Shown here piece after piece: positions 1-20,428 of a DNA stretch of 64,000 nt. How positions within the stretch are numbered: position 1 is the stretch's first letter; the number at the start of each line of letters is the position of its first letter. A model generated the notes under the pieces. That model was not told the DNA's origin and did not search any database. It saw only the letters and a list, made by a program, of their open reading frames with translations. The DNA lies in the IMG/VR virus record IMGVR_UViG_3300034117_001582, positions 186,001 to 250,000 of that record, one strand, 5' to 3'. The position numbers and the translations under genes were made by a program.

Positions 1-3000
1 GTTCCATTTGTACCTGAAGTCCCGTTCGTACCATTTGTTCCTGATGTTCCATTAGTCCCTGATGTTCCGTTTGTTCCATTAGTCCCTGAAGTTCCATTCG
101 TTCCATTAGTTCCGCTAGTCCCATTTGTACCTGAAGTCCCGTTGGTTCCATTAGTACCATTCGTCCCTGAAGTGCCATTTGTGCCGCTAGATCCATTAGT
201 CCCAGAAGTTCCGCTAGTACCGTTAGTGCCTGAAGTACCATCTGTACCTGATGTTCCCGCAATAAATGGTGATAATGAAGTGGTTACCTGAGCAATTGTT
301 GCATCTTCAAAATAACAAGTCATTGTTTTTGCACCTAATGAGGTTGCATAGAACTTAACGACTATTCTATCACTAATATTTACCGTTGTTGCGGGTACAG
401 GTACAGAAAATAAATAAAGCTCCACAAGCGTACCGTCGCTAATGGGGTGGGGTGCCGCACTATTTGATCCAATTAAAGTTTCAGTACCACCTGTTGTTCT
501 AATATATATATCAGCATATAATTTTGGAGTACCACCATTGGAGCTCATACTAACGTAATTCTCAAAGTTCCAGTTTCCTGCGGGTATTGTGGTTATTCCT
601 GGATCACCAATAATTGTTGAAAATGAACCTATTAGTTGTGTTCCAGCACCTGTTGCCGTTAATGTTGTTCCGGCACCTATCACTATGTTTCTATCCATTA
701 CATAGTAAGTTGGAATTGTAGATGCGGATGAAGGGTTAAAATAATAAACTAAACCTGTTGAAAATCCATTCACCCCTGAAGTTCCATTAGTACCGCTGGT
801 TCCGTTCGTTCCATTTGTACCTGATGTTCCATTGGTCCCTGATGTTCCATTCGTCCCGTTTGTTCCCGATGTACCATTCGTTCCGTTAGTACCTGAGGTT
901 CCATTCGTTCCGCTAGTTCCATTTGTTCCTGAAGTCCCATTTGTACCATTTGTTCCGTTTGTTCCACTAGTCCCATCTGTTCCGTTAGTCCCCGATGTTC
1001 CGTTGGTTCCATTAGTCCCGCTAGTACCATTGGTACCTGATGTTCCTGAAGTTCCATTTGTACCTGACGTTCCATTTGCACCATTTGTTCCCGAAGTCCC
1101 ATTTGTACCATTAGTCCCATTTGTACCATTAGTTCCTGATGTTCCATTAGTCCCCGATGTGCCATTTGTTCCATTAGTTCCTGATGTACCATTAGTACCG
1201 TTAGTTCCTGAAGTCCCGTTAGTTCCTGAAGTCCCGTTTGTGCCATTTGTTCCTGACGTTCCGTTAGTTCCACTTGTACCATTGGTACCTGATGTTCCGT
1301 TAGTTCCATTAGTACCATTAGTACCATTAGTTCCTGAAGTACCATTTGTACCTGATGTACCATTCGTACCATTTGTTCCACTAGTACCATTTGTTCCCGA
1401 AGTTCCATTAGTTCCATTCGTACCTGAAGTACCTGATGTTCCATTGGTCCCTGAAGTTCCGTTTGTACCAGAAGTCCCTGAAGTACCATTTGTACCGTTA
1501 GTTCCACTTGTACCATTTGTTCCGTTAGTGCCCGATGTTCCATTAGTACCTGAAGTACCGTTTGTTCCGTTAGTTCCTGAGGTACCATTCGTTCCCGAAG
1601 TTCCATTTGTACCATTGGTTCCGCTAGTTCCGTTTGTTCCATTAGTACCTGAAGTTCCATTAGTTCCTGACGTACCATTTGTACCGTTTGTTCCCGAAGT
1701 ACCGTTTGTTCCCGAAGTACCATTTGTTCCTGATGTTCCATTAACCCCCGATATGCCACTTGTACCATTTGTTCCTGATGTTCCATTTGTACCATTTGTT
1801 CCGCTAGTACCATTCGTACCTGAAGTTCCGTTCGTTCCATTTGTACCTGAAGTGCCGTTTGTTCCATTAGTTCCTGATGTCCCATTTGTACCATTCGTTC
1901 CATTTGCTCCGCTAGTACCATTTGTACCCGAAGTTCCATCAGTACCATTAGTTCCGTTAGCACCTGAAGTACCATTTGTTCCGCTAGTACCATCCGTTCC
2001 ATCCGTTCCATTTGTACCACTAGTACCATTTAATCCGCTAGTCCCATTTGTACCTGAAGTACCATTTGTACCTGAAGTACCATTTGTACCGCTAGTACCA
2101 TTGGTACCTGATGTTCCGTTAGCACCACTAGTTCCGTCAGTTCCATTTGTGCCTGAAGTGCCATTTGCGCCGCTAGTACCGTTAGTGCCACTTGAACCAT
2201 TTGTACCATTAGTACCGTTAGTTCCTGATGTTCCATTTGCCCCTGAAGTCCCGTCTGTTCCGCTAGTTCCATTTGTACCATTAGTTCCTGATGTACCATT
2301 AGTTCCTGAAGTACCGTTTGTTCCATTAGTGCCTGATGTCCCATTTGTTCCTGAAGTTCCGTTTGTACCATTTGTTCCTGAAGTACCATTCGTACCATTC
2401 GTACCTGATGTCCCATCCGTACCATTTGTTCCTGACGTACCATTAGTACCTGAAGTCCCATTTGCTCCGCTAGTCCCATTTGTACCATTAGTTCCTGAAG
2501 TTCCATTTGTCCCTGATGAACCATCTGTTCCGCTAGTTCCATTTGTACCATTAGTTCCGTTAGTTCCGCTAGTTCCATTTGTACCATTTGTTCCTGATGT
2601 TCCGTTTGCTCCTGAAGTACCATTTGTTCCGCTAGTACCATCCGTACCATTCGTCCCCGAAGTTCCATTGGTACCGTTAGTTCCGTTTACTCCGCTAGTT
2701 CCATTTGTACCTGACGTTCCATTTGCACCATTTGTTCCCGAAGTCCCATTTGTACCATTAGTCCCATTTGTACCATTAGTCCCACTTGTACCGTTTGTGC
2801 CTGATGTACCATTTGCTCCGCTAGTACCGTTTGTGCCTGAAGTTCCGTTTGCTCCGCTAGTACCGTCAGTACCACTAGTCCCATTGGAACCATTAGTCCC
2901 TGAAGTTCCGTTAGTACCATTCGTACCGTTGGTTCCATTAGTCCCTGAAGTTCCGTTAGTACCCGATGTGCCATTAGTCCCTGAAGTTCCGTTAGTACCC

Positions 3001-4067
3001 GATGTGCCATTTGTGCCTGATGTTCCATTCGCACCACTAGTTCCATTTGTTCCGCTAGTCCCGTTTAATCCTGATGTTCCATCCGTTCCGTTTGTACCAT
3101 TTGTTCCTGAAGTTCCATTTGTTCCTGAAGACCCATTTGTTCCACTTGTTCCATTAACCCCTGATATACCACTTGTTCCATTCGTACCATTTGTTCCCGA
3201 AGTTCCGTTTGCCCCTGACGTACCATTTGTTCCCGAAGTTCCGTTTGCCCCTGACGTACCATTTGTTCCCGAAGTTCCGTTTGTACCATTAGTTCCTGAG
3301 GTACCATTTGTTCCGCTAGTTCCATTAGTACCACTAGTGCCATTTGTACCGTTTGTGCCTGAAGTTCCGTTTGCTCCGTTTGTACCTGAAGTTCCGTTTG
3401 CTCCGCTGGTACCATCCGTCCCACTTGTTCCGTTCGTGCCGTTTGCTCCGCTTGTGCCGTTGGTTCCATTAGTCCCTGAAGTTCCATTAGTACCACTAGT
3501 GCCGTTTGTACCTGAAGACCCATCCGTTCCGTTTGTACCATTTGTTCCTGAAGTTCCATTAGTTCCGCTAGTTCCTGAAGTACCGTTGGTACCTGATATA
3601 CCACTTGTTCCATTTGTACCATTTGTTCCGCTAGTACCATTAGTCCCTGATGTTCCATTTGTACCTGATGTGCCTGCAGCTCCGCTTGTTCCATTTGTCC
3701 CACTTGTACCATTAGTGCCTGATGTACCATTTGTCCCATTAGTCCCATTCGTACCTGAGGTCCCATTTGCGCCGTTAGTTCCTGATGTACCACTTGTTCC
3801 TGATGCACCAGCAGTAAATCCAGTTACCGAAACGGAATTTCCATCATTTCTTACTAAATTTAATGTTTGAGCAGATGTAACAAAAGTTCCACCTGTAACA
3901 AAAATATCTGTTGCTCCACTTAATATAAAAGACTTTAAATTATTAACATATGTATGTACCGTATCACCCGTTGCCGCAGAGAAATAAGAAACCAACGGAA
4001 CTAAGTCTGTGGCCCCTATGCCCGAGAGCGGTAAAAATGGTAATTGAGATATTTTTTTATTTGCCAT
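1..4067 (-). CDS. Giant Gly-X-Y (GTS/GTN/GAN) repeat fibre protein, putative tail/head fibre; runs off the window start
   Basis: My translation from ATG 4067: MANKKISQLPFLPLSGIG..., then ~1,010 aa of G-T-S/G-T-N triplets, a ~170-aa globular domain (nt ~260-770), then more triplets. The frame is the same at 4067, across the globular domain and at the window start, with no stop seen, which explains its absence from the ORF track. TATTTAT lies upstream (plus 4083-4089). Confidence 0.9.
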   Translation of the reverse strand, partial: MANKKISQLPFLPLSGIGATDLVPLVSYFSAATGDTVHTYVNNLKSFILSGATDIFVTGGTFVTSAQTLNLVRNDGNSVSVTGFTAGASGTSGTSGTNGANGTSGTNGTNGTNGTSGTNGTSGTNGTSGAAGTSGTNGTSGTNGTSGTNGTNGTSGISGTNGTSGTSGTNGTSGTNGTNGTDGSSGTNGTSGTNGTSGTNGTNGTSGANGTNGTSGTDGTSGANGTSGTNGANGTSGTNGTNGTSGTNGTSGTNGTSGTNGTNGTSGTNGTSGANGTSGTNGTSGANGTSGTNGTNGTSGISGVNGTSGTNGSSGTNGTSGTNGTNGTDGTSGLNGTSGTNGTSGANGTSGTNGTSGTNGTSGTNGTSGTNGTSGTNGTNGTNGTNGTSGTNGSNGTSGTDGTSGANGTSGTNGTSGANGTSGTNGTSGTNGTNGTNGTNGTSGTNGANGTSGTNGTSGVNGTNGTNGTSGTNGTDGTSGTNGTSGANGTSGTNGTNGTSGTNGTNGTNGTSGTDGSSGTNGTSGTNGTNGTSGANGTSGTNGTSGTNGTDGTSGTNGTNGTSGTNGTNGTSGTNGTSGTNGTNGTSGTNGTSGTNGTNGTSGTDGTSGANGTSGTNGTNGTNGSSGTNGTSGANGTSGTNGTDGTSGANGTSGTNGTSGTNGTSGTNGTSGTNGTSGLNGTSGTNGTDGTDGTSGTNGTSGANGTNGTDGTSGTNGTSGANGTNGTNGTSGTNGTNGTSGTNGTNGTSGTNGTSGTNGTNGTSGTNGTSGISGVNGTSGTNGTSGTNGTSGTNGTNGTSGTNGTSGTNGTNGTSGTNGTNGTSGTNGTSGTNGTNGTSGTNGTSGTNGTNGTSGTNGTNGTSGTSGTNGTSGTNGTSGTSGTNGTNGTSGTNGTSGTNGTNGTSGTNGTSGTNGTNGTNGTNGTSGTNGTSGTNGTSGTNGTNGTSGTNGTSGTNGTNGTSGTNGTNGTSGTNGTSGTNGTNGTNGTNGTSGTNGANGTSGTNGTSGTSGTNGTSGTNGTNGTSGTNGTDGTSGTNGTNGTNGTSGTNGTSGTNGTSGTNGTNGTSGTNGTNGTSGTNGTSGTNGTNGTSGTNGTSGVNGFSTGLVYYFNPSSASTIPTYYVMDRNIVIGAGTTLTATGAGTQLIGSFSTIIGDPGITTIPAGNWNFENYVSMSSNGGTPKLYADIYIRTTGGTETLIGSNSAAPHPISDGTLVELYLFSVPVPATTVNISDRIVVKFYATSLGAKTMTCYFEDATIAQVTTSLSPFIAGTSGTDGTSGTNGTSGTSGTNGSSGTNGTSGTNGTNGTNGTSGTNGTSGTNGTNGTSGTNGTNGTSGTNGTSGTNGTNGTSGTNG
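774..3809 (-). repeat. 9-bp-period coding repeat (GGN ACN TCN/AAY/AGY) encoding Gly-X-Y triplets
   Basis: Degenerate gttccattt/gtacctgaa units throughout; third codon positions vary. A second block lies at 1-258. Confidence 0.95.
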
Positions 4068-4107: not shown

Positions 4108-4473
4108 TTACCAATTAAATTCACAACAAAAGTCACTATTTACAAATGAGTCCAAAACGGTCACATATATTTTATCTCGTAGAGGTAATATTATTGTTCC
4201 TTGATCGGTGGTTATATTAAATTCGGCCATATATCTATTTGTTTTTGATGTGTTTTTTTTTGTGAATTGATAGGTAATTGTGTGGGAATCATTTGAATAA
4301 TTACAAACACCATTTGTTATTTTATATATACCACTATCAACATCCACCATTGAAAGGGTTATTGTTGCTCCCGTTAAGTTTGTGTTTTGATAATTATAAT
4401 CCAATCTACCATCCTTAAATAGATTTATTTCAAGGACAGGCAAGGTTGCGTTTTTTCTTATAAAAAATTCCAT
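4108..4473 (-). CDS. BppU/DUF2479-like Ig-fold baseplate or fibre-adaptor protein
   Basis: MEFFIRKNATLPVLEINL...LTGATITLSM...ITYQF...YMAEFNIT...IILP pattern resembles BppU N-terminal domains; lies next to the fibre. Start moved to 4473 because TATTTAT sits 4 nt upstream. Confidence 0.55.
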   Translation of the reverse strand: MEFFIRKNATLPVLEINLFKDGRLDYNYQNTNLTGATITLSMVDVDSGIYKITNGVCNYSNDSHTITYQFTKKNTSKTNRYMAEFNITTDQGTIILPLRDKIYVTVLDSFVNSDFCCEFNW

Positions 4474-4489
4474 AAACATAAATAGTTAG

Positions 4490-4520
4490 AAAAAAGAAAA
4501 GGTGTCCTTTCGAACACCTT
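4490..4520 (-). terminator. Rho-independent terminator
   Basis: 7-bp stem (plus AAGGTGT 4499-4505 / ACACCTT 4514-4520) followed on the minus strand by TTTTCTTTTT. Confidence 0.7.
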
Positions 4521-4591
4521 CCTTAGATTCTAAACACCCCCCTTTCTTTAAAAGGTTTATGAATTAAGAGATTTACCTCTACCTTCCTATT

Positions 4592-6517
4592 TTAAGCCGT
4601 TGGTTTTAACCCTATACCGCTAACGACATCTTGGACTTGTTTAAATTTCTCATCCATTTTAGTGGTAATATCTTTAATTGCCGGTTCGATTAACTTAGCA
4701 ACCTCTTGTTTAAATTTATTTTCATCCACACTTGCAAACATTAATCCTGAAATACCTTCTGTACCAAAACTTGTTTTGTAACCCTCCATCGCCTTTGTCG
4801 CAATCATTGCACTTAACTCATCAACTCTATTTTCTTTAATTGCTCTTTCAATAACATCTTCAGGAAGTTCTTCAAATGCTGTGAGAATCATATTATGCTC
4901 ATCTTCTTTATTTTTAACTTGGTCAGCAATTTTTTGACCCAATCTTGTTTTAATGTCCTTTAACACATTATTACCTTCAGCACCATACAATCCATTCATC
5001 ACATCCAAGAACGTTTCGTTAACGATTGTTTTATTGTAACCGGCACGTAATAACATTATTCTTTCCTCACGCAAAGTTGATTCAACAATTCTTTTTCTAT
5101 TTTTATTAATACCAACCAAAGAAAAATTATATCTTTTGTTAATTAATTTTTTTTCTTCTGAAATAATTTGTTTTTTTTCAATATGTTCAGAAACGACCTT
5201 TCTGATTGTATTAGATACTGACATAATCCTGTTTTCCTTATAAATATCTTTATTTTGTTCTAATGTGAATCTTAAACCAAATATTTTTAATTTAGAACCA
5301 ACATGTACCAATCTTTTTACCATTTGGTTTGCCCTTCTTGGGTATTTGTCTTTATATGTTAAAAAACACGACTCAACGTCTTGTCTTCTTTCAGTGATTG
5401 TCTCCTCACCACCTAAGGTATCAATAGTTTTTGAACCATCATTAACAAGTACCATATCATTATAAAAATCTCTTGTAAGTCTAATACACTGCCTTTCGGT
5501 AATGTCTTTTTGAGGTTTTGGAGGTTTTATTACAATTTTTTTAAGTTTAACTTCTATTTCGTTATTACTATTAAATTTTAAATTATATCTTTTTTTAACG
5601 GAAATATACCCTTGGTTGGTTACTTTAACAACTATTTTATCAATATCTTTAACTTCGTGTGTAACTCCACCTTTACCTGATATCAACGGGGTTGTTTCAT
5701 CGTCTCCGTAAACCTGTATATCAGAACCCATCAAAGGATTATCATTTTCATCAATAACGGAAACTTTAAAGGGTGTGGTTGTTTTGATTTTAAAATTTAC
5801 AACATTTTCATAACCCTTACGTATAATTAATTTTTTTTCAGAATTAGGGTTGTCCTCATCTCCCTTACTCATCATAGAGTTATTTAACTTGATGGTTTTT
5901 TCTATATTCTCTTTAATGTTAAAATACTTAACACCAACAGTAATGTTTAACAGTTCACCACTAGCCTCCGCATCGAATACGGGGTATTTTGTTTTATCTA
6001 AAATTATGTTAGATAACATACCATTATTATCGGTTACGTTATTTCCAAATTCAATATCAGTACGTTTATACTTTATGGTTATTGTCGCATTTGGTATAGG
6101 GGAATTAAACTCATCATTAACCTGAACAGATAATGATGTTATATCAAATGTTGTTTTTACTATTACCTCCTCAACGTTTTGTACGTCCCTAAACGTAAAG
6201 TCTTGATTATAAACTTTAGGTTGGGATAAATCAATATTCTCCACAAGATCTTCATACCCCTCATTTTTATTTGTTACTTTATATGTGTATACCCCTAATG
6301 GGATATTTTCAATTTTAAAGAAACCATTTTCGTCAGATGTCGCACCTTTAATTAATTTTTCGTTTTGAAATAATTTTACTTGTGAATTTGGAGATTTACT
6401 TGCTTTATATTTTACATAACCTTGAAGTGTAGCAAATCCATCTTCCTCGTTTAATAAACGATGAAGGGATGAAATTTGTTTTTTTTCAGTTTCAGTAAGG
6501 ATTAATTTTCTTAACAT
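4592..6517 (-). CDS. Leader-bearing 641-aa protein with carboxypeptidase-regulatory-like (transthyretin-fold) repeats and a helical C-terminal module
   Basis: LQGYVK...PNSQVKL...GATSDENGFFKIENIPLGVYT; VQVNDEFNSPIPNATITI...TDNNG; leader LTETEKKQISSLHRLLNEE; internal second leader at nt 5224. Confidence 0.65.
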   Translation of the reverse strand: MLRKLILTETEKKQISSLHRLLNEEDGFATLQGYVKYKASKSPNSQVKLFQNEKLIKGATSDENGFFKIENIPLGVYTYKVTNKNEGYEDLVENIDLSQPKVYNQDFTFRDVQNVEEVIVKTTFDITSLSVQVNDEFNSPIPNATITIKYKRTDIEFGNNVTDNNGMLSNIILDKTKYPVFDAEASGELLNITVGVKYFNIKENIEKTIKLNNSMMSKGDEDNPNSEKKLIIRKGYENVVNFKIKTTTPFKVSVIDENDNPLMGSDIQVYGDDETTPLISGKGGVTHEVKDIDKIVVKVTNQGYISVKKRYNLKFNSNNEIEVKLKKIVIKPPKPQKDITERQCIRLTRDFYNDMVLVNDGSKTIDTLGGEETITERRQDVESCFLTYKDKYPRRANQMVKRLVHVGSKLKIFGLRFTLEQNKDIYKENRIMSVSNTIRKVVSEHIEKKQIISEEKKLINKRYNFSLVGINKNRKRIVESTLREERIMLLRAGYNKTIVNETFLDVMNGLYGAEGNNVLKDIKTRLGQKIADQVKNKEDEHNMILTAFEELPEDVIERAIKENRVDELSAMIATKAMEGYKTSFGTEGISGLMFASVDENKFKQEVAKLIEPAIKDITTKMDEKFKQVQDVVSGIGLKPTA

Positions 6518-6519
6518 GT

Positions 6520-9500
6520 TTAAAAATTTCTCAAACCTAATTTACTTTCGTATTTGGTGTTACATTTATTTAAAATGTGATTAACCGTCATTTTTTGTCT
6601 TTCACTTAATTCGAATTCTTTTTTACCACTTTGTAACGACCTACAGAATCCTCTTTTAATCACTATCCTTGCAGAAAATTTAACTAAACTATTAAAGAAC
6701 TCTCTTGTTGGTTCTAATTTGTAAATAACAATCTTGTCGTTAAATATTGAATTAATCTCACTTGTGGTAAAATATTCTTTAAGTTCTTCAGGTGGAGTTT
6801 CAGTTGTCCAACCTTTTCCCATCTTTTCTCTTACTTTATCTCTTACCTTTTTTGGTAAGTCTTCAATACCTTCTTTTTCGTTTCTTTTAAGAACGTTTAT
6901 TGCCGACTCTTCTTTTTTTTTTAAGTCATCCTCCGATTTGGAGTTGACTTCAGTTTCTTTAGTTCGTGGTTCCTTTTTTTCTAAATCCATATTTGCCAAC
7001 TGATTTGGTGTATAATCACCTTTAACTAAAAACCAGTTTCCGTTTGCAGGCCTTGCAACTGAAAATATTTCCATCTCACCACGACTTTCTTTAATCGTTC
7101 TTAAAACTAATGCCAATCCTCTTGGTGTTGCTGATTCATGAATGTTTGCTAAGTCTTTTGTAAACATAATCTTAACAACATCTTCATGAGTGTCGATAAC
7201 TGCTCTAACAAATGAATCATCCTCATCGTATTTTTTTCTGTAATGATTAATTCTATCCATTACATCTTCCATTTTTATTTTTACTTCTTTATATTGGCCA
7301 GGATTTTTTTCATCCTGAGCTTTAAATGTAAACGTATCTTTCCAATGTTTGAAGTTATCTTCTCCAAATTTTTCTTTATTTCGTTCAGTTATCATAATAT
7401 TCGTTTTTTTGTATCTTGATTCATTCATATTACCACTAATAAATTCATCAAGACTAAATTCATATCCATCTTTTTCTGAATAAACAACCAAAGGCCTATC
7501 CTTACGTCTTGGGTTTGCTTTCAACGAATATGTGTTATTTTTATATAAAAACACAGGGTCTGAACTCTTATTATCTAAAGTGTCTATAGTCATAATTTTT
7601 TCTAATTCTTGAGCTTTAGGTATGTTGTCCCTATTTTGTACCAGACCAACTACCTGTAGTTTTCTCAATGTTAGTATTTCCATTTTTTTGGCATATTCTT
7701 TTGGGTGTTCCAAAGCATACGGCTTAACAACGTTATTATTATTATCATCATTATTTATTTCTTCAGTCTTTTTTTTAATTTTTTCTGCAGCATCGTCAGT
7801 AAAATACCATTTCACAAAGTTATCCACTTGTGTATTAAAAGGTATAACAAAATCAAAAATTTCAAAAAACCATTCCCCAAGAGTATCCGTTTCTCCGTTA
7901 AACATTAGTGCGAATGGGCCAAAAGTATCTTTTATATCGGACCACTCATTTTCTATTAAAGAACCTACAGGTGCTTTACAATACTTTGCATATGTTGAGT
8001 CTTCTACTAAATTTAGGTAACTGTTATCCCCTCCAACTTTAAAACCAAATAACTCAGATTCTTTATCACCAACCGTACTAAAAAAACACGACCATCCAAA
8101 CATTACAATAGATAAAGAAAAATTAATTGCTAACGGAATTAAAACATTAGCTCTGAACCATATTCTCATATACATGTCAAATACCGAGTCCATACCATAT
8201 CCAGAAATATATCTTTTTCCTTTTTTACCAAAAGTAAACCGGTTTAAAAGACTTCTTCTACTTTTGGCCATTTCTTCAACATATTCCTTAAAAGTACTTA
8301 AAGTACCCGTCAAACTATATTGCCACCATCTAGTTGCCCAACCAGAACTCGCTGCGTAAATTTTGCCAAAATAATCTTTAAACTTAGTTCCAAATGGATT
8401 TTTTAAAAAACTAAAAAAATCCTTAACTTTTGCCCATAACGCTTTGACTTCTTGTGTTCCAGTGGCTGCACTTTCTGTATCTAATTTTTCAAAAAATAGT
8501 TGCAATACGTTTAATTTTTCTTCACCCGTTCCAGGGATTACTTTTCCATTTACGTCTTTTCTAGATACATTTGCTTCTAACTCTTCTATTTTGCTTAAAA
8601 TGGTTTCTCTTAATTTATCATCAGATATTGAATTTTTTATTTTTGTTATAATATCATTATATAATGTAGTGTACGATTTGTCAGCAAATTCGTTAAATTG
8701 TTTCATTTTAATAACAAGATTTTTAATCCTATCTGCTAATAATTTTCCGGCATTAATATCTTTTACCGAACCTTGTTCAATACCAATTAAAAGGTCTGAA
8801 ATCTCTTGTTCTAAAACCGCCGCGTCTTTTTTAACTGATAAAAACACTAAATTTATTAATTCTGAAAATTGGTCTATTAAAAAGGGTGCCCCTCTAAGCC
8901 ACGTCATAATACTTTCCCACGCCCCTTGACCTTTTTTTACAGTTGGTATTATGATCTCCAATGACGCTTTATAAGGTTTTTCAAATAGCTCCTCTACCAC
9001 CTTACCTTCTTGTTCTGAAAAACCAAACAATTTTTTATATGTTGCAATAAATTTCTTTTTAATTACGTCCAAAGCCTGTTTTTTAACAAAATCACTATCT
9101 CCGGCAATTTGTTCCATTCTAGCCTTAACTTCCTTATTAAAATCTTGAACGACTTCTTTTGTAAGATTGTCAGCTGGATCGGCTAAGGCGGCTATTAAGT
9201 CTTCTTTCACCTCCGCACTAACAAAGTCTTCAACCCTATCATTTATTATTTTCCAATTATCAGTACCCATTTTTGACTCTAAAAAACTCATAATCTCTTC
9301 TATTGTTTTTCCAGCCCCAATCATTTCTTCAACTTTTGCAACCGCGGCTTTTCTAGCGGTTTCTTCCGCACCACTTTTAGCGGTTTTTCCAGCAACTTCT
9401 GAACGTGTATCACCAAACATTTTTAATATTGCTAACTGTCTTCTAGACGCCGCCTCTGCTCCCAACTCTCCGGTTTCTAAAACCATTCTCCAAATTGCGG

Positions 9501-9615
9501 TTCCAGCATCACCTCTACTTTCATTAATTAAATGTTTAATTGGCGTATTTTCCACAATGGGTAAATTAGACATACGTCTAAATCTTATTATTTCTTCTAA
9601 TAATTGTGCGTTCAT
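6520..9615 (-). CDS. Large 1031-aa leader-bearing protein, putative virion/internal head protein
   Basis: Long ORF; leader MNAQLLEEIIRFRRMSNLPIVE...LINES; hydrophobic stretch near aa 490-515; upstream TATTTATAAATA (motif at plus 9629-9635). Confidence 0.6.
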   Translation of the reverse strand: MNAQLLEEIIRFRRMSNLPIVENTPIKHLINESRGDAGTAIWRMVLETGELGAEAASRRQLAILKMFGDTRSEVAGKTAKSGAEETARKAAVAKVEEMIGAGKTIEEIMSFLESKMGTDNWKIINDRVEDFVSAEVKEDLIAALADPADNLTKEVVQDFNKEVKARMEQIAGDSDFVKKQALDVIKKKFIATYKKLFGFSEQEGKVVEELFEKPYKASLEIIIPTVKKGQGAWESIMTWLRGAPFLIDQFSELINLVFLSVKKDAAVLEQEISDLLIGIEQGSVKDINAGKLLADRIKNLVIKMKQFNEFADKSYTTLYNDIITKIKNSISDDKLRETILSKIEELEANVSRKDVNGKVIPGTGEEKLNVLQLFFEKLDTESAATGTQEVKALWAKVKDFFSFLKNPFGTKFKDYFGKIYAASSGWATRWWQYSLTGTLSTFKEYVEEMAKSRRSLLNRFTFGKKGKRYISGYGMDSVFDMYMRIWFRANVLIPLAINFSLSIVMFGWSCFFSTVGDKESELFGFKVGGDNSYLNLVEDSTYAKYCKAPVGSLIENEWSDIKDTFGPFALMFNGETDTLGEWFFEIFDFVIPFNTQVDNFVKWYFTDDAAEKIKKKTEEINNDDNNNNVVKPYALEHPKEYAKKMEILTLRKLQVVGLVQNRDNIPKAQELEKIMTIDTLDNKSSDPVFLYKNNTYSLKANPRRKDRPLVVYSEKDGYEFSLDEFISGNMNESRYKKTNIMITERNKEKFGEDNFKHWKDTFTFKAQDEKNPGQYKEVKIKMEDVMDRINHYRKKYDEDDSFVRAVIDTHEDVVKIMFTKDLANIHESATPRGLALVLRTIKESRGEMEIFSVARPANGNWFLVKGDYTPNQLANMDLEKKEPRTKETEVNSKSEDDLKKKEESAINVLKRNEKEGIEDLPKKVRDKVREKMGKGWTTETPPEELKEYFTTSEINSIFNDKIVIYKLEPTREFFNSLVKFSARIVIKRGFCRSLQSGKKEFELSERQKMTVNHILNKCNTKYESKLGLRNF

Positions 9616-9640
9616 TTGTTTTTTATTTATAAATACCTGT

Positions 9641-13295: not shown

Positions 13296-13627
13296 ACCTT
13301 ATAATTATTACCTGTTGGCCCCATGGTTCTTCCTGATGCCCATTTTTCACCAGCTTTACCTAACATATTACCTTTACCTCTACCAGTTTTATCCTCTCTT
13401 TTAGCACTTGTTATTGGATTACCTGGTCCTCTTCCTACTCCCGAGTCCCATGGCGTAATACTTGCTCCTGTGTCTGATGAGGTGTCTGTAGGTGCATCAC
13501 CTTCTTCATTAACCTCTTCTTCATTAACCTCTTCTTCATCCAATTCCGTTTCATCAATTTCTGCAGCATCTTTAACTTCCATAAGGAATTTAATTCTTTT
13601 AATATTATCTAAAAATTTTTTACTCAT
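13292..13627 (-). CDS. Small acidic/Gly-rich leader-bearing protein
   Basis: MSKKFLDNIKRIKFLME; acidic tract; W-x-SG-x-x-RG/MG-x-x-N-like repeats; 4-nt overlaps with both neighbours. Confidence 0.7.
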   Translation of the reverse strand: MSKKFLDNIKRIKFLMEVKDAAEIDETELDEEEVNEEEVNEEGDAPTDTSSDTGASITPWDSGVGRGPGNPITSAKREDKTGRGKGNMLGKAGEKWASGRTMGPTGNNYKV

Positions 13628-15228
13628 GCTACTATTTCAAAATTGTTAAGTTGGTTAAAAGCGTTACCTCTGGTTTCACTAGTTCCTGTACCTCCAGCGT
13701 TTAAGTCAACAAAGTAATTTATCGCATCATCTTCATTTGTAAATTCAGGAAGTTGGTCAGCGGATTTACATTTTGTAAAAAATGAGACTGCCACTTCAGC
13801 AGCAATATCAACATCATTTACAACTTCAGGGTTACTTACCAATTCCCTACCAATACAAGTACCATACTTTTCGTAATTCCCTTTAAACGTTAACCCATTA
13901 AACCCTCTTCCTCTATATTTAAAACCTTCGGTTTTTGAATTTCCAAACATACCTCCGTAAACTCGATTAAAAAATTTTTCATCGTCTGATTTTAATTCAT
14001 TTAATTCAACATCGTCAGATGGTACTCTACTTTTAAAAATTTCCCGAATTCTAGAGTTATCTGTATTACCATACCCAGTTTCATTTTGAGGGATAAACCC
14101 CGACTCTTTACCTATGACGCAAAGAATACCGACTTGGGTGTATGGGTTAGTAATCCCTTTTTTATTCATATAATCTATCATTATTTGAGCGTTTCGTCTT
14201 GTTTCACCACCTAAACCAACAATTTCAACTTTACCGTTTAAAAGTGAAACAACATTAGAAATTACACCCATTTTTATTAAGAACATAGATAAGTCTTCAT
14301 CATCAAAACCTTTAATTTTTAAATTAAAAAACATTTCCTCTAATGTTTCAGAATCCGCAATCCCCGTTTCTGGTAAATTAACGGATTTTTGATAATTATA
14401 AATCGCTTCTTGAGTGTCTCTGTCAAACTTACCGGTAATCTCTAAATCATCTGATATTGATAAGAAGTTCAGTGCTAATTGTATTTGTTCAATATCGGGT
14501 TTAAAACTACCACTACTTCTTGAGTCGTAAACGTTACCTGATTTCCACATTTCTTGAAATCTCTCTAAAAATTCATATATAGTATCAAAATCGGTAACAT
14601 CTTCACCACTAATATCAACATTATCTTTTTCTATGAACGGTAAGTCTTCTATTTTTGGTTCTATATCAATTTCAAAATCAGAAACATTTTGAAATAACGC
14701 ACTATCAATTTCATTTTTTAAGTTATTAATTTTATCATTACTAAACCCTAAACCATAATCTATAGAATCATATGACCCTAAAACATCTGCACCATTTTTA
14801 GTAAATGTCTGATAAAATAATTTTGATTCATCTTCTAACTCTTTAAAATCTTCCTTTTCTTCACCACCATAAAAATAATCCTCATCAACAATACCTTTAA
14901 TGATGTTAATATTTGCCCTTGGAAATGTTTTATTTAATGCGTCAATTAAAAATGGTATGTTTTTTTTATTTTTAAATTTATCATTAACCCCAATAGACAC
15001 AAAAACATGGTCTACGTAAGGCATTGGGGATTGGTCTGTTAGTTGATTTAACAATTTATCTATTGTCATATCATCGTTTACTAAGTTTGGTAAACTGATA
15101 AAATCATCACTTTCTAAATAACCTATAAGGCGGTCACCTATTAATACAACCTTAACTGGCGACTCGATATCCTCCTTAAGGTTTGACAATCTTTTAAAGT
15201 TTTTTATTTCATGTAAAATAGTTTTCAT
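13624..15228 (-). CDS. GH19-family lytic glycosidase with a peptidoglycan-binding domain and a degenerate SGNH-like N-terminal domain
   Basis: PG-binding IQLALNFL...TGKFDRDTQEAIYNYQ...TGIAD; GH19 KESG...YRGRGFNGLTFKGNY...NPEVV...AAEVAVSFF; N-terminal IGDR...SIGVND. Confidence 0.8.
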   Translation of the reverse strand: MKTILHEIKNFKRLSNLKEDIESPVKVVLIGDRLIGYLESDDFISLPNLVNDDMTIDKLLNQLTDQSPMPYVDHVFVSIGVNDKFKNKKNIPFLIDALNKTFPRANINIIKGIVDEDYFYGGEEKEDFKELEDESKLFYQTFTKNGADVLGSYDSIDYGLGFSNDKINNLKNEIDSALFQNVSDFEIDIEPKIEDLPFIEKDNVDISGEDVTDFDTIYEFLERFQEMWKSGNVYDSRSSGSFKPDIEQIQLALNFLSISDDLEITGKFDRDTQEAIYNYQKSVNLPETGIADSETLEEMFFNLKIKGFDDEDLSMFLIKMGVISNVVSLLNGKVEIVGLGGETRRNAQIMIDYMNKKGITNPYTQVGILCVIGKESGFIPQNETGYGNTDNSRIREIFKSRVPSDDVELNELKSDDEKFFNRVYGGMFGNSKTEGFKYRGRGFNGLTFKGNYEKYGTCIGRELVSNPEVVNDVDIAAEVAVSFFTKCKSADQLPEFTNEDDAINYFVDLNAGGTGTSETRGNAFNQLNNFEIVA

Positions 15229-16754: not shown

Positions 16755-19214
16755 CTATTTTATAATCGTTAAGTTCCCTGAAAATTCTCTTTTACCATCA
16801 TCTTTAATCATACCAAATCTAACAACCCAAGTATATGTTCCATCAGGACATTTAATGTTATTATATGTTCCATCCCAAGTTGATTTAGAATCATTTGTTT
16901 CCCATATAGTTTCACCCCATCTGTTAAATATTTTCATATTAAAGTCATAAGGATTAAATCCTGATGTGAATACGGGAGCAAATGTCTGATTATGTTCATC
17001 ACCATCAGGGGTAAACGTATTAGGTATATATATCAAATCTTGTGGACAAAGTTCCAAAGTCACATTAAATGTTTGAGGGAGTGACACACAACCATTATCC
17101 CATCTTACAACATCAAAAGTAAATAAACCATCCTGATCCCAAGTTATATTAATAGTGGGGCCTTGTAATGTATCACCAAATACGTACCACTCATTATAAC
17201 CACCATTAGGTGATATCGCTTCATACATATCAACTATACTATCACCTTCACATATTTGGTGATATTCATAATTAACTCCATTTCTACCGTCAACAACAGG
17301 CGTTATTAATGGTCTTGGATATACTTGGACATTTATATTTGTGTCAAAAACACATCCTGATTGATTATAAACATAGGTAATATTATCAATACCGACAAAA
17401 CCATTATCAGGACAATATTCATTACCCCAAATATTATTACCAAATAAGATACCTCCAGGTGGTGTTGTAATAACATTAACACAACCATCATATTCACAAT
17501 AAGGTCCCATAGGTGTGATAACTGGTAGTACGTTTAAAACCACAATATTAAAGTTCTGAGGTAATGATTGGCAACCAAGTTGGTTTACACCAATCACTGA
17601 TAGCGCACCATTATAAAATCCACCATTAACCCCCGTTACATCCAAGTTTATTTGACCCGTACCTTGTCCTGAGGTGATATTTCCTATCGTGTTAGTCCAA
17701 ACATACCCTAAGTTAGGGAAAAGACTTGTAATCCCATAAGGATTGATTGTGGAGTTATAACAAACCGTGTCTAAACCTGTAATTTGGTTGATTGTAACCA
17801 TTGGTGGGTCAATTAATGTTGTTGTTCCTTGTGATGTACACCCATAAGTGTCAGTAACAATACAACTAATATTTCCCGAACATAAATTATTTGCGACTTG
17901 CGTTGTTTGTCCATTACTCCATAAGAACGTATATGGTGAAACCCCATCAATTGGATTAACTGCCGATTGACCATCACAATCCCCAAAACATGTTGGATTA
18001 ATATTTGCAAATTGTGGTGATTGTAATGGTGGCGGGTTATTTAATGTTACTGAAGAACTATAGGTACATCCAGCAGCATCAACTAAATTATATGTGTATA
18101 TACCTGAACATAAATTAGTTAAATTAAAATTATTACCTAAACCATTCCATGATATAGTCGTAACTCCATTCCCCCCATTTGGTGTGATGATTATATCTCC
18201 GTCACACCCATTATTACAATGTGGGTCATTTGCCACAACATTTGGTGGTGGTAAATTAGGTGGTCCAGGAGCCACAAATACGGTGTCAGGACCCAAATTT
18301 CCAATACCCACATTACACGTACTCCATCCCGCATTACAAATAGGATATACAAAATGACAAGTATAATTTGCTCCTGCCGGTGGAGGGGTTACAGTAATTG
18401 TCGGACCCGTACCAATTGGATTTGGGTTACCAACCTGATACCAAGTTAGGGTAGGGGTAACAGCAGGACCACTTGGTGTCCATCTATGTGAGTTGTTTTG
18501 AGTTGACCATTGAGAAGAGTTTCTTCCCGGAACTGCAATACCAATAGTTCCTGGTTGGTTATGAATCCCTTGAACTGCCGTCCCAAGAGCCCAATTAGGG
18601 CAATTTGGTTTGTTCTGTATGTGGTTTTCAATTACATTTGTTGATTCATATATGACAATATGAAAATTACCTTGTAAATTAGTACACAAGTACATAGGAA
18701 CGTTAATCCAGCTAACGGTTAATTTTCGACAAGGAGCAACTCCCGATACTTGATATCTGATTTGTCCTCCGATTCCAGGGTGCCAGTCTTGCCAAGGACC
18801 CATAATACAATTCTTTGGAACATTTAAACCACCATTAGGAATTGCAACAGAAGCAAAGGTTGCTGGTTGGCCACCTGAAAAACCAATCCATCCATTAGAT
18901 CCAATGTAGAACTGTGTGTATGTATTTCCAAAAAAACAAAAGGTAAACCCTATGTTTTGTGGTTGAGATATTGCATCATCACCTAAAAAGACTTGCGTTC
19001 CTGTGTTGGTTTGTGCAACATAAGGAATGTTAGTTACACCATAGTTTGTGGTTTGATTAGGATTTGCACCACCTGGACCACACTGACTTAAGTCCGCCGT
19101 TAAAGTGGTCGAGTTAACACCACAAGGTAATAATTGGTCAGGACCAAGATATGGGCAATATTGTGAATAACTATAAAAAGTTAAAAAAATAAAAAGGTAT
19201 TTAAGTAGTTTCAT
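16755..19214 (-). CDS. SprB-like adhesin with gliding-motility-associated C-terminal domain (T9SS type-B sorting signal)
   Basis: Signal peptide ending YSYSQ; SprB-like repeats (C.G.CDG...GG.SPYTFLWSNG.TTQ...NLC.G); C-terminal IYIPNTFTPDGDEHNQTF...IFNRWGETIWET...WDGTYN...DGTY. Confidence 0.9.
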   Translation of the reverse strand: MKLLKYLFIFLTFYSYSQYCPYLGPDQLLPCGVNSTTLTADLSQCGPGGANPNQTTNYGVTNIPYVAQTNTGTQVFLGDDAISQPQNIGFTFCFFGNTYTQFYIGSNGWIGFSGGQPATFASVAIPNGGLNVPKNCIMGPWQDWHPGIGGQIRYQVSGVAPCRKLTVSWINVPMYLCTNLQGNFHIVIYESTNVIENHIQNKPNCPNWALGTAVQGIHNQPGTIGIAVPGRNSSQWSTQNNSHRWTPSGPAVTPTLTWYQVGNPNPIGTGPTITVTPPPAGANYTCHFVYPICNAGWSTCNVGIGNLGPDTVFVAPGPPNLPPPNVVANDPHCNNGCDGDIIITPNGGNGVTTISWNGLGNNFNLTNLCSGIYTYNLVDAAGCTYSSSVTLNNPPPLQSPQFANINPTCFGDCDGQSAVNPIDGVSPYTFLWSNGQTTQVANNLCSGNISCIVTDTYGCTSQGTTTLIDPPMVTINQITGLDTVCYNSTINPYGITSLFPNLGYVWTNTIGNITSGQGTGQINLDVTGVNGGFYNGALSVIGVNQLGCQSLPQNFNIVVLNVLPVITPMGPYCEYDGCVNVITTPPGGILFGNNIWGNEYCPDNGFVGIDNITYVYNQSGCVFDTNINVQVYPRPLITPVVDGRNGVNYEYHQICEGDSIVDMYEAISPNGGYNEWYVFGDTLQGPTINITWDQDGLFTFDVVRWDNGCVSLPQTFNVTLELCPQDLIYIPNTFTPDGDEHNQTFAPVFTSGFNPYDFNMKIFNRWGETIWETNDSKSTWDGTYNNIKCPDGTYTWVVRFGMIKDDGKREFSGNLTIIK

Positions 19215-19315: not shown

Positions 19316-20428
19316 ATGTCTAAAAAACTTTTAACATTACTTGCGGAAGAAATTAAAGAACAGGGGTTCGGTAGATATTTTCAAGACGCCATACTACCAA
19401 GCGGTCAAAGAATAGGAGACGTTAAAAGTGTTGACTTAGCGACTAGTAAACCAATCGATATCACTATTTCAGACACAGAAGATTTACCAAGCGACACAGA
19501 AGAATTACCAAATGAAGTTAAAGACGAGGAAGATGTGATTTTTCAAGATATTGTAAAAGACTCTGAAAAATCAATTGGTACTAAATATTGTTATGGTGGT
19601 AATGATCCAAATGAAGGTATAGATTGTAGCGCGTTTATGTTATATTATTACAAAAAGTACGGAATAGACCTACCAAGAAGCGCTAATAGTCAATATAATG
19701 CGTCTAAAAAATTTGACAATAAGGATAACTTAAAAGTTGGTGATTTAATCTTTTTTGAAGGAACACAAAAAGCATTACCTGATGGTTCCGCAAGTCATGT
19801 GGGTATGGTTCATAAAATACACCCTGACGGAAAAATAGATATGATTCATGCGAGCAGTAGTAAAGGAGTTATAATTCAACCGAATGTTTTTGGAAAAAAC
19901 TATTACAAAAAACATTTTTTAAGTTTTGGAACGTTTAGAAAAGGTATATCCCCCAAAAAAGTTGAAGACAATAAGATATTAGGTGGAAATACAAATTTAA
20001 AAAAACAAAAATTTATTTACCCATTACCAAAAAAAGTTAGATTGTCATCTCCATTTGGGCCTAGAGGGGGAAGACATCATAATGGTGTTGACCTTGCTTG
20101 TCCTGGTAATACAGAAGTATATTCGGTTGCTGATGGGAAAGTGGTTAGGGCAGACATTAAAGACTATGAAGGTTACGGTAATTTTATAATTGTTAAACAC
20201 ATCTTAAATGGTGAAACCTTATATTCAGGATATGCCCATTTAACTAAAATGTTGGTAAGTGTTGGTGATGAAGTTAAACAAGGACAATTAATTGCGAAAT
20301 CTGGTGGATCACAGGGTATGCGTAACGGTGCAGGTAATTCAGAGGACCCACATTTACATTTTGAAATTAGAAAAAGTCAAACGGGTGGACCCATTAATCC
20401 AATACATTTTATAGACGACATTAAGTAA
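19316..20428 (+). CDS. NlpC/P60 + M23 dual-domain peptidoglycan endopeptidase
   Basis: GIDCSAF...LPRSA...GDLIFF...HVGM...MIHAS; HNGVDL...YAHL...STG-like SEDPHLHFEI; TATTTAT at 19305-19311. Confidence 0.92.
   Translation: MSKKLLTLLAEEIKEQGFGRYFQDAILPSGQRIGDVKSVDLATSKPIDITISDTEDLPSDTEELPNEVKDEEDVIFQDIVKDSEKSIGTKYCYGGNDPNEGIDCSAFMLYYYKKYGIDLPRSANSQYNASKKFDNKDNLKVGDLIFFEGTQKALPDGSASHVGMVHKIHPDGKIDMIHASSSKGVIIQPNVFGKNYYKKHFLSFGTFRKGISPKKVEDNKILGGNTNLKKQKFIYPLPKKVRLSSPFGPRGGRHHNGVDLACPGNTEVYSVADGKVVRADIKDYEGYGNFIIVKHILNGETLYSGYAHLTKMLVSVGDEVKQGQLIAKSGGSQGMRNGAGNSEDPHLHFEIRKSQTGGPINPIHFIDDIK

What the first reader, a model, noticed from the sequence alone, without database searches (positions are those of the whole stretch)
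4592..5246. Nested start inside the 641-aa gene: internal TATTTATA + in-frame ATG + leader
Seen: within ORF 4592-6517 the minus strand reads GATATTTATAAGGAAAACAGGATTATG, with the motif at plus 5240-5246 and the ATG at 5224. It is followed by MSVSNTIRKVVSEHIEKKQIISE, a type-3 leader. The full cassette signal is therefore kept inside a coding sequence. Inference: two cassettes fused while keeping a separately expressed ~210-aa C-terminal product, giving two isoforms.
Basis: partly seen in the sequence, partly recalled or inferred. Interest (0 to 1): 0.6.

Follow-up and report, generated by a model that had tools for sequence, protein, structure and literature searches.

The report
Nested start inside fused phage gene
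A 641-residue gene of an uncultured T4-like giant phage from lakes is an in-frame fusion of two expression units, and the start signals of the second unit are still conserved inside it, so it probably makes a long protein and a nested 210-residue one; this is a clear new case of a known phage trick.

Summary
On the minus strand, TATTTATA lies at 5246..5239. An in-frame ATG lies at 5224..5222 and is M432 of ORF 4592..6517. The peptide after it resembles one class of N-terminal "leaders" used by this phage.

The window belongs to a 292-kb T4-like virus record that probably infects Bacteroidota. TATTTATA sits 3-37 nt upstream of about 50 predicted starts.

The 210-residue C-part occurs as a stand-alone gene at the same syntenic position in relatives. 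There it has the same box at the same 14-nt spacing. In most relatives it is fused behind varied N-parts (Ig-like, MORN repeats or unknown).

In 28 non-redundant fused homologs (44-97% identity):
- the ATG is invariant;
- codons D-I-Y-K-E, which spell GATATTTATAAGGAA, show almost no synonymous change and form the lowest-diversity window of about 250;
- Lys427 is fixed on the rare AAG codon.

A tree needs at least 4 switches between the fused and stand-alone states. One close pair is identical from 39 nt upstream of the ATG and unrelated before that.

So the fusion is shown. Continued use of the nested start is strongly implied but not demonstrated: the RNA data were contigs only and told nothing. 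The function of the all-helical C-part is unknown.

The parts
4592..6517 (-). Composite ORF, 641 residues (P0001); the long isoform
   Evidence: It is open in more than 30 diverged homologs, with 257-564 codons upstream of the internal ATG.
5225..6517 (-). N-part, residues 1-431. It has its own N-terminal leader (MLRKLILTETEKKQISSLH, the EEKK class), CarboxypepD_reg/Ig-like beta-sandwich domains, and a conserved 100-residue segment (330-431).
   Evidence: Pfam PF13620 scores 51.3 bits against a cut-off of 32.3. Leader class. Segment 330-431 is conserved in the fused homologs whose N-parts resemble this one. The ATG at 6517 lies 2 nt after the stop of the upstream gene, with no box before it.
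5234..5248 (-). Promoter-like box embedded in codons D424-I425-Y426-K427-E428 (GATATTTATAAGGAA). The core TATTTATA is at 5246..5239, 14 nt before the ATG.
   Evidence: There are no synonymous changes at D, I, Y and E in 28 homologs. K427 is AAG in 17 of 17, although AAG is 13% of Lys codons. This is the lowest 3-, 5- and 7-codon synonymous window of about 250. Stand-alone genes have the same spacing.
5222..5224 (-). Internal in-frame ATG (M432), the putative start of the short isoform
   Evidence: It is ATG in every homolog whose alignment reaches this position (44 loci) and in 28 of 28 non-redundant fused ones. A is present at -3 and -6. Local folding is -4.5 kcal/mol, less structured than 82% of internal in-frame ATGs.
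5153..5224 (-). Leader-like N-terminus of the C-part (MSVSNTIRKVVSEHIEKKQIISEE)
   Evidence: It resembles the N-termini of other genes in this genome (MSIKNIIKNMVLEQ, MKDLIRKVLKEY, MNQQESIRKILREE).
4592..5224 (-). C-part: 210 residues plus stop, all-helical, no known family; the putative short isoform
   Evidence: No Pfam, PHROG or PDB match. AlphaFold model has pLDDT 64 and nine helices. Homologs are stand-alone or at the C-terminus of 463-817-residue proteins.
4497..4522 (-). Terminator-like hairpin (11 pairs) with a T-run, about 70 nt after the stop; it closes the cassette
6520..9615 (-). Upstream 1031-residue gene, probably co-transcribed with the long isoform. Its C-terminal end is the syntenic neighbour of the stand-alone C-part genes in relatives.
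   Evidence: 75% identity to the 298-residue gene of L002 and 60% to the 285-residue gene of L049.
9628..9635 (-). TATTTATA box 12 nt before the start of the 1031-residue gene; the likely promoter for the long transcript

Best explanation
ORF 4592..6517 is a composite of two expression cassettes joined in frame.

- The upstream cassette (residues 1-431) has its own leader and beta-sandwich display-type domains. It has no stop codon or terminator, so translation starting at 6517 reads through what used to be the intergenic promoter and start region of the downstream cassette. That region is now spelled as ..K-D-I-Y-K-E-N-R-I-M.., and the result is a 641-residue protein.
- The downstream cassette keeps its TATTTATA box, its 14-nt spacing, its ATG (M432) and its own N-terminal leader. 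I infer these are still used, by an internal transcript start and/or internal translation initiation, to make the 210-residue helical protein on its own.

The gene would then give two nested proteins that share the C-terminal module. The short, constant module is present in all relatives. The long form is that module with an optional, lineage-variable N-terminal extension. Both probably enter the same assembly or interaction, so only a subset of copies carries the extension.

Shown: the anatomy, the stand-alone homologs, the nucleotide-level constraint and the repeated change of state. Inferred: that the box is a promoter, that the short product is made, and what the module does.
For: 1. Sequence as described.
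2. Genome-wide, the box lies upstream of starts: 51 of 110 copies are within 40 nt of a start, in a genome that is 94% coding.
3. Stand-alone homologs at the same locus carry the box. L002/L003/L005/L006/L032/L033 (210 residues) have ATATTTATAATAAAAC with 14 nt to the ATG. L049/L050 (201 residues) have the box 18 nt upstream. L048 (221 residues) has TATTTATT 12 nt upstream. Their upstream gene is the homolog of the window's 1031-residue gene.
4. In 28 non-redundant fused homologs, ATG is 28/28, GAT 24/24, ATT 28/28, TAT 28/28, GAA 27/27 and AAG 17/17. I425 is the only one of 16 Ile columns with a single codon, and Y426 the only one of 8 Tyr columns. The window's observed/expected synonymous diversity is 0.00-0.02, against a median of 0.8.
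5. L049 (stand-alone) and L055 (fused to an unrelated 262-residue N-part) are identical from 39 nt upstream of the ATG and unrelated before that.
6. The stand-alone state needs at least 4 changes on the C-part tree and is nested among fused forms. The start signals therefore worked each time the genes came apart.
7. Leaders are N-terminal almost everywhere else in the genome.
8. The ATG context has A at -3 and -6, which are positive determinants in Bacteroidia (PMC6847099), and low local structure.
Against: - There is no direct evidence of a transcript start or of the short protein. RNA-run contigs lie over the C-part in 4 of 4 runs and over only parts of the N-part in 2 of 4. They are contigs of relatives, the C-part is the more conserved region, and one contig spans the junction.
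- The flanks of the internal box look like ordinary coding sequence, not like true upstream regions (rank 36 of 68).
- No sigma-70-type promoter is found there.
- That TATTTATA is a promoter is inferred from position only.
- In 9 of the 28 fused homologs the box is TATTTATG, which departs from the 8-mer.
- G at -12 and -13 is not what the Bacteroidia initiation context favours.
- D-I-Y and Met could have a protein-level role.
- The 28 sequences are related, so counts are not independent events.
Confidence: 0.62

Rival explanations
1. Relic only. The two cassettes fused, but only the 641-residue protein is made. D-I-Y, Glu and Met are kept for protein reasons, and the invariant codons reflect AT-biased codon use and shared ancestry.
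For: The flanks of the box look like ordinary coding sequence. GAT, TAT and GAA are the commoner codons, at 78%, 71% and 83%. 12 of 101 well-conserved columns show no synonymous change anyway. There is no expression evidence.
Against: Five adjacent codons without synonymous change form the lowest window of about 250. ATT is only 55% of Ile codons, yet it is 28/28 here, while all 15 other Ile columns vary. Lys is fixed on the rare AAG. Where Asp is replaced it becomes AGT, which keeps GTATTTAT as in true upstream boxes. The residues after D-I-Y vary (K-E-N, G-E-S, I-K-N, Y-K-T, S-E-M) while the DNA core stays. Viable stand-alone genes arose or persisted at least 4 times.
Confidence: 0.15
2. Recombination junction. 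The conserved DNA is kept because it is the shared regulatory cassette at which modules are exchanged between co-infecting phages, as with PeSL elements. It is seen repeatedly because recombinants arise there, not because it drives expression inside the fused gene.
For: There is a sharp junction 39 nt upstream of the ATG in L049 versus L055. Unrelated N-parts (Ig-like, MORN, unknown) sit before one C-part family. The phage is T4-like, and PeSL-mediated shuffling is described in T4-like phages (PMC2839356, PMC4122927).
Against: PeSLs are themselves promoters, so this does not exclude expression. Exchange by itself does not explain an invariant ATG at a fixed 14-nt spacing, or purifying selection on the box within long-diverged fused lineages that share homologous N-parts.
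Confidence: 0.12
3. Proteolytic separation. The long protein is the only translation product, and the C-part is released afterwards by the phage's gp21-type prohead protease, which cuts after Glu within the internal leader (VSE, ISE).
For: The genome encodes a Peptidase_S77 (T4 gp21-type) protease, E 5.5e-26. T4-family prohead proteases cleave C-terminal to Glu and remove N-terminal propeptides and capsid-targeting sequences (PMC5694885; PMC3012670). [LI]xE occurs within the first 14 residues in 30% of this phage's proteins, against about 15% in later windows.
Against: This needs neither the Met nor nucleotide-level conservation of the box. It is not known that this protein enters the prohead. 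Cleavage sites are short and common.
Confidence: 0.08

Closest known systems
Nested in-frame genes of phages made from an internal start (lambda C/Nu3, T7 gene 4A/4B, phiX174 A/A*); named from my own knowledge, not tested here
   Same: A shorter protein identical to the C-terminal part of a longer one, with its own start signals lying inside the longer coding sequence. The two products probably act in one assembly.
   Different: Here the nested unit is demonstrably a former (and elsewhere current) independent gene with a promoter-like box, not only a ribosome-binding site. The N-terminal extension is optional and swapped between lineages. Neither product has been observed.
PeSL mobile promoter/terminator cassettes of T4-like phages (PMC2839356, PMC4122927)
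   Same: A T4-like genome. Short conserved regulatory units (hairpin plus T-run, then a box just before the ATG) bound small variable genes in arrays. An indel junction between close relatives lies at the unit.
   Different: The box is TATTTATA, 3-37 nt from the ATG, not a sigma-70 early promoter. The host is probably Bacteroidota. In this case the unit has been swallowed into a reading frame, which is not described in what I read of the PeSL papers (title lines of both, abstract of one).
Ig-like domains added to only a fraction of phage structural proteins by alternative translation (programmed frameshift; Fraser et al. 2006); from my own knowledge
   Same: An optional beta-sandwich (Ig-like) extension on a constant module, with long and short forms coming from one gene.
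   Different: The extension is N-terminal and would be omitted by an internal start, not added by a frameshift. A virion role for this protein is not shown.
T4 internal proteins with a capsid-targeting sequence (PMC3012670, PMC5694885)
   Same: Many otherwise unrelated proteins share a short N-terminal peptide with an early [LI]xE, in a genome with a gp21-type protease and a Gp23-type capsid protein.
   Different: There are five leader classes on about 50 genes, far more than in T4. Packaging and cleavage are untested, and there is no sequence similarity to the T4 sequence.

Membership tests
Nested in-frame gene (internal start giving a C-terminal isoform) | In-frame start codon inside a longer intact ORF | tested here: met
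   ATG 5224..5222 is M432 of ORF 4592..6517. It is ATG in 28 of 28 fused homologs.
Nested in-frame gene (internal start giving a C-terminal isoform) | Own initiation signals upstream of the internal start, under selection | tested here: met
   TATTTATA lies 14 nt upstream, the same as in stand-alone genes. It is the lowest synonymous-diversity window in the alignment. The function of the signal is inferred from position only.
Nested in-frame gene (internal start giving a C-terminal isoform) | Both protein products are made | not testable with these tools
   Only contigs of metatranscriptomes were available; they give no starts or levels.
PeSL-type regulatory cassette of T4-like phages | T4-like phage genome | tested here: met
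   Gp23 PF07068, E 3.6e-64. Peptidase_S77 PF03420, E 5.5e-26.
PeSL-type regulatory cassette of T4-like phages | Composite terminator stem-loop plus sigma-70 early promoter | tested here: not met
   A hairpin with T-run followed by a box is present. But the box is TATTTATA, and sigma-70-like sites are not enriched (19 found against 25 expected).
PeSL-type regulatory cassette of T4-like phages | Indel or replacement junctions between close relatives fall in the cassette | tested here: met
   L049 and L055 are identical from 39 nt upstream of the ATG onward and unrelated before that.
T4-type capsid-targeting sequence proteins | Short shared N-terminal peptide on otherwise unrelated proteins, with a gp21-type protease in the genome | tested here: met
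   About 50 of 351 genes fall in five leader classes. Protease found.
T4-type capsid-targeting sequence proteins | Cleavage after Glu and presence inside the capsid | not testable with these tools
   Only motif enrichment is available: [LI]xE in 30% of first-14-residue windows against about 15% elsewhere.
CarboxypepD_reg (PF13620) beta-sandwich domain (N-part) | Pfam score above the gathering cut-off | tested here: met
   51.3 bits against a cut-off of 32.3, residues 30-109.
T4 late promoter (TATAAATA) | TATAAATA on the coding strand at -10 | tested here: not met
   The coding-strand box is TATTTATA, the reverse complement of TATAAATA. Only the palindromic variants TATTTATAAATA contain both.

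The most novel reading that the evidence does not exclude
The TATTTATA-ATG-leader unit is a mobile expression-and-targeting cassette system of a lineage of T4-like giant phages of freshwater Bacteroidota. About 50 genes per genome carry one of five N-terminal leaders that work like capsid-targeting propeptides read by the gp21-type protease and scaffold. Cassettes recombine at the box. When a cassette lands in frame, the result is a nested gene whose two products each carry their own targeting leader, so one locus delivers a constant module with and without a swappable binding extension.
Probability: 0.2. Interest if true: 0.7.

Novelty: new member of a known kind. Interest (0 to 1): 0.45.

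Why it matters
The site shows, by comparison alone, a promoter-like box and a start codon kept under nucleotide-level selection while also being translated as D-I-Y...M. It also catches both the fused and the stand-alone state in close relatives. That makes it a tidy natural case of how phage genes gain and lose N-terminal display modules without losing expression of the core module.

It gives annotators of uncultured giant phages a concrete rule: look for box + ATG + leader inside long ORFs.

It also draws attention to a large, undescribed set of leader-bearing genes in a T4-like phage of Bacteroidota. These could be tested as packaged or ejected proteins.

Tried and rejected
- **Near-identical phage records:** none found.
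- **Paralogs of the C-part in the same genome:** none.
- **Pfam and PHROG on the C-part:** nothing significant.
- **PDB by profile:** only designed helical repeats, which I take as composition matches.
- **Foldseek against PDB:** used a pLDDT-64 model; no match at E <= 0.001.
- **ESM Atlas by features:** no usable hit.
- **Paper searches for the leader strings:** none found.
- **Sigma-70 promoter scan:** no enrichment and no site at the internal start.
- **T4 late promoter:** rejected because the orientation is opposite.
- **Shine-Dalgarno reading of AAGGAA/GGAGAA at -15..-10:** considered, but Bacteroidia ribosomes ignore such sequences (abstracts). The fixed G's remain unexplained.
- **Flank scoring of the box:** does not separate the internal site from chance intragenic sites.
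- **RNA runs:** contigs only, from relatives, no starts.
- **P0051 as a stand-alone case:** rejected, because its apparent split is a 10-N scaffold gap.
- **P0014:** cut by the contig end.
- **HK97-type protease:** absent.

Full report
**What is there.** The window is bases 186001-250000 of a single 291,867-bp virus record (32% G+C, CheckV 99% complete). On the minus strand the sequence reads GATATTTATAAGGAAAACAGGATTATG.
- TATTTATA is at 5246..5239.
- The ATG is at 5224..5222. It is in frame and is M432 of the 641-residue ORF 4592..6517 (P0001).

**The genome.**
- It encodes a T4 Gp23-type capsid protein (PF07068, E 3.6e-64) and a T4 gp21-type prohead protease (PF03420, E 5.5e-26). It has no HK97-type protease. 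I therefore treat it as a distant T4-like giant phage.
- A neighbouring gene (16755..19214) has a CHU_C type IX secretion domain with SprB and PKD repeats. Start regions are A/T-rich and lack Shine-Dalgarno sequences. Both points suggest a Bacteroidota host.
- Relatives and sequencing runs that hold the stretch come from lake water.

**The box.**
- The window holds 37 copies of TATTTATA against 17.6 expected.
- The genome holds 110 copies. Of these, 51 lie within 40 nt upstream of a predicted start on the same strand, although 94% of the genome is coding. Another 27 are sense-intragenic and 16 antisense.
- Distances to the ATG cluster at 3-5 nt and at 10-21 nt. The internal site's 14 nt falls in the second group.
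- Many copies follow a hairpin and T-run of the preceding gene.
- A terminator-like hairpin at 4522..4497 follows P0001.
- I call the box promoter-like from its position. Nothing here shows that transcription starts at it. It is not a sigma-70 consensus, and on the coding strand it is the reverse complement of the T4 late box.

**The leaders.** About 50 of 351 predicted genes begin with one of five shared N-terminal peptides:
- ..IRLTESDLxRIVxRVIxE
- MKIIITESQYxxL
- MNLQENIRRIxxMMG
- ..LIRKVLKEE
- ..FIISEEEKKxIxxLH

Strict patterns for these give 52 N-terminal matches and 1 internal match. That one is a mis-called start. A relaxed pattern for the IRKVLKE class gives 24 N-terminal and 4 internal matches, against 0.36 expected.

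One of the internal matches is M432+5 of P0001. P0001's own N-terminus belongs to the EEKK class. So both halves of the ORF begin like independent genes of this phage.

**Relatives: stand-alone and fused forms.** The C-part has no paralog in the genome and no Pfam, PHROG or PDB relative.

Homologs are stand-alone genes of 201-221 residues, or the C-terminal end of proteins of 463-817 residues.

Stand-alone cases confirmed on contigs with flanking genes:

| Loci | Length | What lies before the ATG |
|---|---|---|
| L002, L003, L005, L006, L032, L033 | 210 residues | 44-nt spacer with ATATTTATAATAAAAC, 14 nt from box to ATG |
| L049, L050 | 201 residues | box 18 nt upstream |
| L048 | 221 residues | TATTTATT 12 nt upstream |
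| L051 | 216 residues, distant | no box |

In L002 and L049 the gene just upstream is the homolog of the C-terminal end of the window's 1031-residue gene, at 75% and 60% identity. Synteny is therefore kept, and the N-part is simply absent there.

In the window the N-part's ATG (6517) follows the stop of that gene by 2 nt, with no box before it. The long form is probably transcribed from the box at 9635..9628.

N-parts of the fused forms differ between lineages. They are CarboxypepD_reg/Big_1-type beta-sandwiches as here, MORN repeats, or sequences with no match.

**A recent event.** L049 (stand-alone) and L055 (fused) have nearly identical C-parts.
- Their DNA is identical from 39 nt upstream of the ATG onward and unrelated before that point.
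- In L055 a 262-residue N-part is inserted after the upstream gene's stop. It has its own TATTTATAATTA-ATG and a FIISKEEKK leader, and it is unrelated to the window's N-part.
- It reads in frame through the old spacer, as ..N-K-P-N-I-Y-I-K-E-N-N-G-M.

This is the fusion (or its reversal) caught nearly in the act.

**Selection on the internal signals.** I took 28 non-redundant fused homologs whose C-parts are 44-97% identical to the window's. I aligned the 100 codons upstream of the ATG plus the C-part, and counted synonymous differences per column against the expectation from their own codon use.

| Position | Codons observed |
|---|---|
| M432 | ATG 28/28 |
| D424 | GAT 24/24; the other four are AGT, which keeps GTATTTAT |
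| I425 | ATT 28/28 |
| Y426 | TAT 28/28 |
| E428 | GAA 27/27 |
| K427 | AAG 17/17, otherwise GGA (8) |

- The 3-, 5- and 7-codon windows over these codons have the lowest observed/expected ratios of about 250 windows (0.00-0.02 against a median of 0.8).
- I425 is the only one of 16 Ile columns with a single codon.
- Y426 is the only one of 8 Tyr columns with a single codon.
- K427 is the only one of 29 Lys columns fixed on AAG, which is 13% of Lys codons.
- The amino acids right after D-I-Y vary between lineages while the DNA core does not.

This is the signature of a nucleotide-level function laid over coding sequence.

**Tree.** On a maximum-likelihood tree of 46 C-parts, the stand-alone state needs at least 4 changes (4-4 across bootstraps). 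It is nested among fused forms. I left out L004 and L026, whose state is unclear, loci whose 3' end is cut off, and exact duplicates. The root is at the midpoint only, so I do not claim a direction for each change. Either way, the C-part start signals had to work on both sides of each change.

**Weaker points.**
- The ATG has A at -3 and -6, which favour initiation in Flavobacterium johnsoniae. But it has G at -12 and -13, where A is favoured (PMC6847099).
- Local RNA folding around M432 is -4.5 kcal/mol. Gene starts average -3.7 and internal in-frame ATGs -7.5. M432 is less structured than 82% of the latter.
- The flanks of the box resemble ordinary intragenic sites.
- Four lake metatranscriptome runs hold contigs over 4440-5051 in all four runs, and only pieces of the N-part in two. 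These are contigs of relatives at 90-99% identity, the C-part is the more conserved region, and one contig crosses the junction. So they say nothing on starts or levels.

**What it most likely is.** It is a composite gene that yields a long 641-residue protein and, from the retained box and ATG, a nested 210-residue protein. I put this at about 0.6.
- The C-part is the constant, all-helical module (pLDDT 64, nine helices).
- The N-part is an optional extension of the kind phages use for weak surface binding.
- My inference is that only some copies of the module in its assembly carry the extension.
- The function of the module is unknown. Its neighbours include a very large collagen-repeat protein and wall-degrading enzymes, which hints at a virion-associated role but does not show one.

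**Rivals.** I weigh three: a relic with protein-level constraint only, a recombination junction of the PeSL kind, and release of the C-part by the prohead protease. The last two do not exclude the nested start.

**Comparison with what is known.**
- In mechanism it resembles nested in-frame phage genes such as lambda C/Nu3 and T7 4A/4B (my own knowledge).
- In evolutionary origin it resembles shuffling at the promoter/terminator cassettes of T4-like phages (PMC2839356, PMC4122927), but with a different box.
- The leader-bearing gene set resembles T4's diverse internal proteins, which share only a capsid-targeting sequence (PMC3012670; PMC5694885). That remains an idea, not a finding.

**Verdict.** The fusion is shown. 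The nested start is strongly implied by comparative evidence but has not been observed. It is a new member of a known kind, of moderate interest.

Noticed in passing
whole genome G000; in the window mainly 41000-64000 (minus strand): About 50 of 351 predicted genes begin with one of five shared N-terminal leader peptides on otherwise unrelated proteins. Some of these proteins have HExxH motifs. All five classes hold an early [LI]xE, and the genome has a gp21-type protease. They may be capsid-targeting or propeptide signals. No paper in the library holds these strings.
   Followed up: partly
window 58713..60308 (-), around residue 340 (about 59290): This is a second internal leader (..LKESIRKVLKEETDG..) inside a 531-residue ORF, but with no Met and no TATTTATA before it. 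It looks like a fused cassette that did not keep its start, in contrast to P0001. The C-part has an HExxH motif.
   Followed up: partly
window 5237..5239 (-), codon K427: Lys427 is fixed on the rare AAG codon in 17 of 17 homologs; the others have GGA. This puts G at -12 and -13 from the ATG. It looks like a Shine-Dalgarno core, but Bacteroidia ribosomes ignore such sequences. Unexplained.
   Followed up: partly
window 3..4067 (-), 44% G+C: A collagen triple-helix repeat protein of more than 1355 residues runs off the window (Pfam E 6e-155). Its repeats create long spurious ORFs on both strands, for example 832..3870 (+).
   Followed up: partly
window 16755..19214 (-): A phage-encoded 819-residue protein carries a CHU_C type IX secretion signal domain with SprB and PKD-like repeats. 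This points to a Bacteroidota host and to a phage protein that may use the host's secretion system.
   Followed up: no
L004:95-97: One relative has an in-frame TAG about 50 codons upstream of the internal ATG, within the conserved 330-431 segment. If it is real, that phage can make the C-part only from the internal start. It could also be a sequencing error.
   Followed up: no
G000 genome-wide: The distance from TATTTATA to the ATG is bimodal, at 3-5 nt and 10-21 nt. The short class would imply leaderless or nearly leaderless messages if the box acts like a -10 element.
   Followed up: no
window 13624..15228 (-) and 19316..20428 (+): Two wall-degrading enzymes lie in the neighbourhood. One has PG_binding_1 plus a glycoside hydrolase 19-like region. 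The other matches PHROG peptidase, metallo-endopeptidase and endolysin families.
   Followed up: no
G000:113952 (+), residue 43 of a 629-residue ORF: This is the only other sense-intragenic TATTTATA followed by an in-frame ATG within 24 nt. It is most likely the true start of that gene.
   Followed up: no
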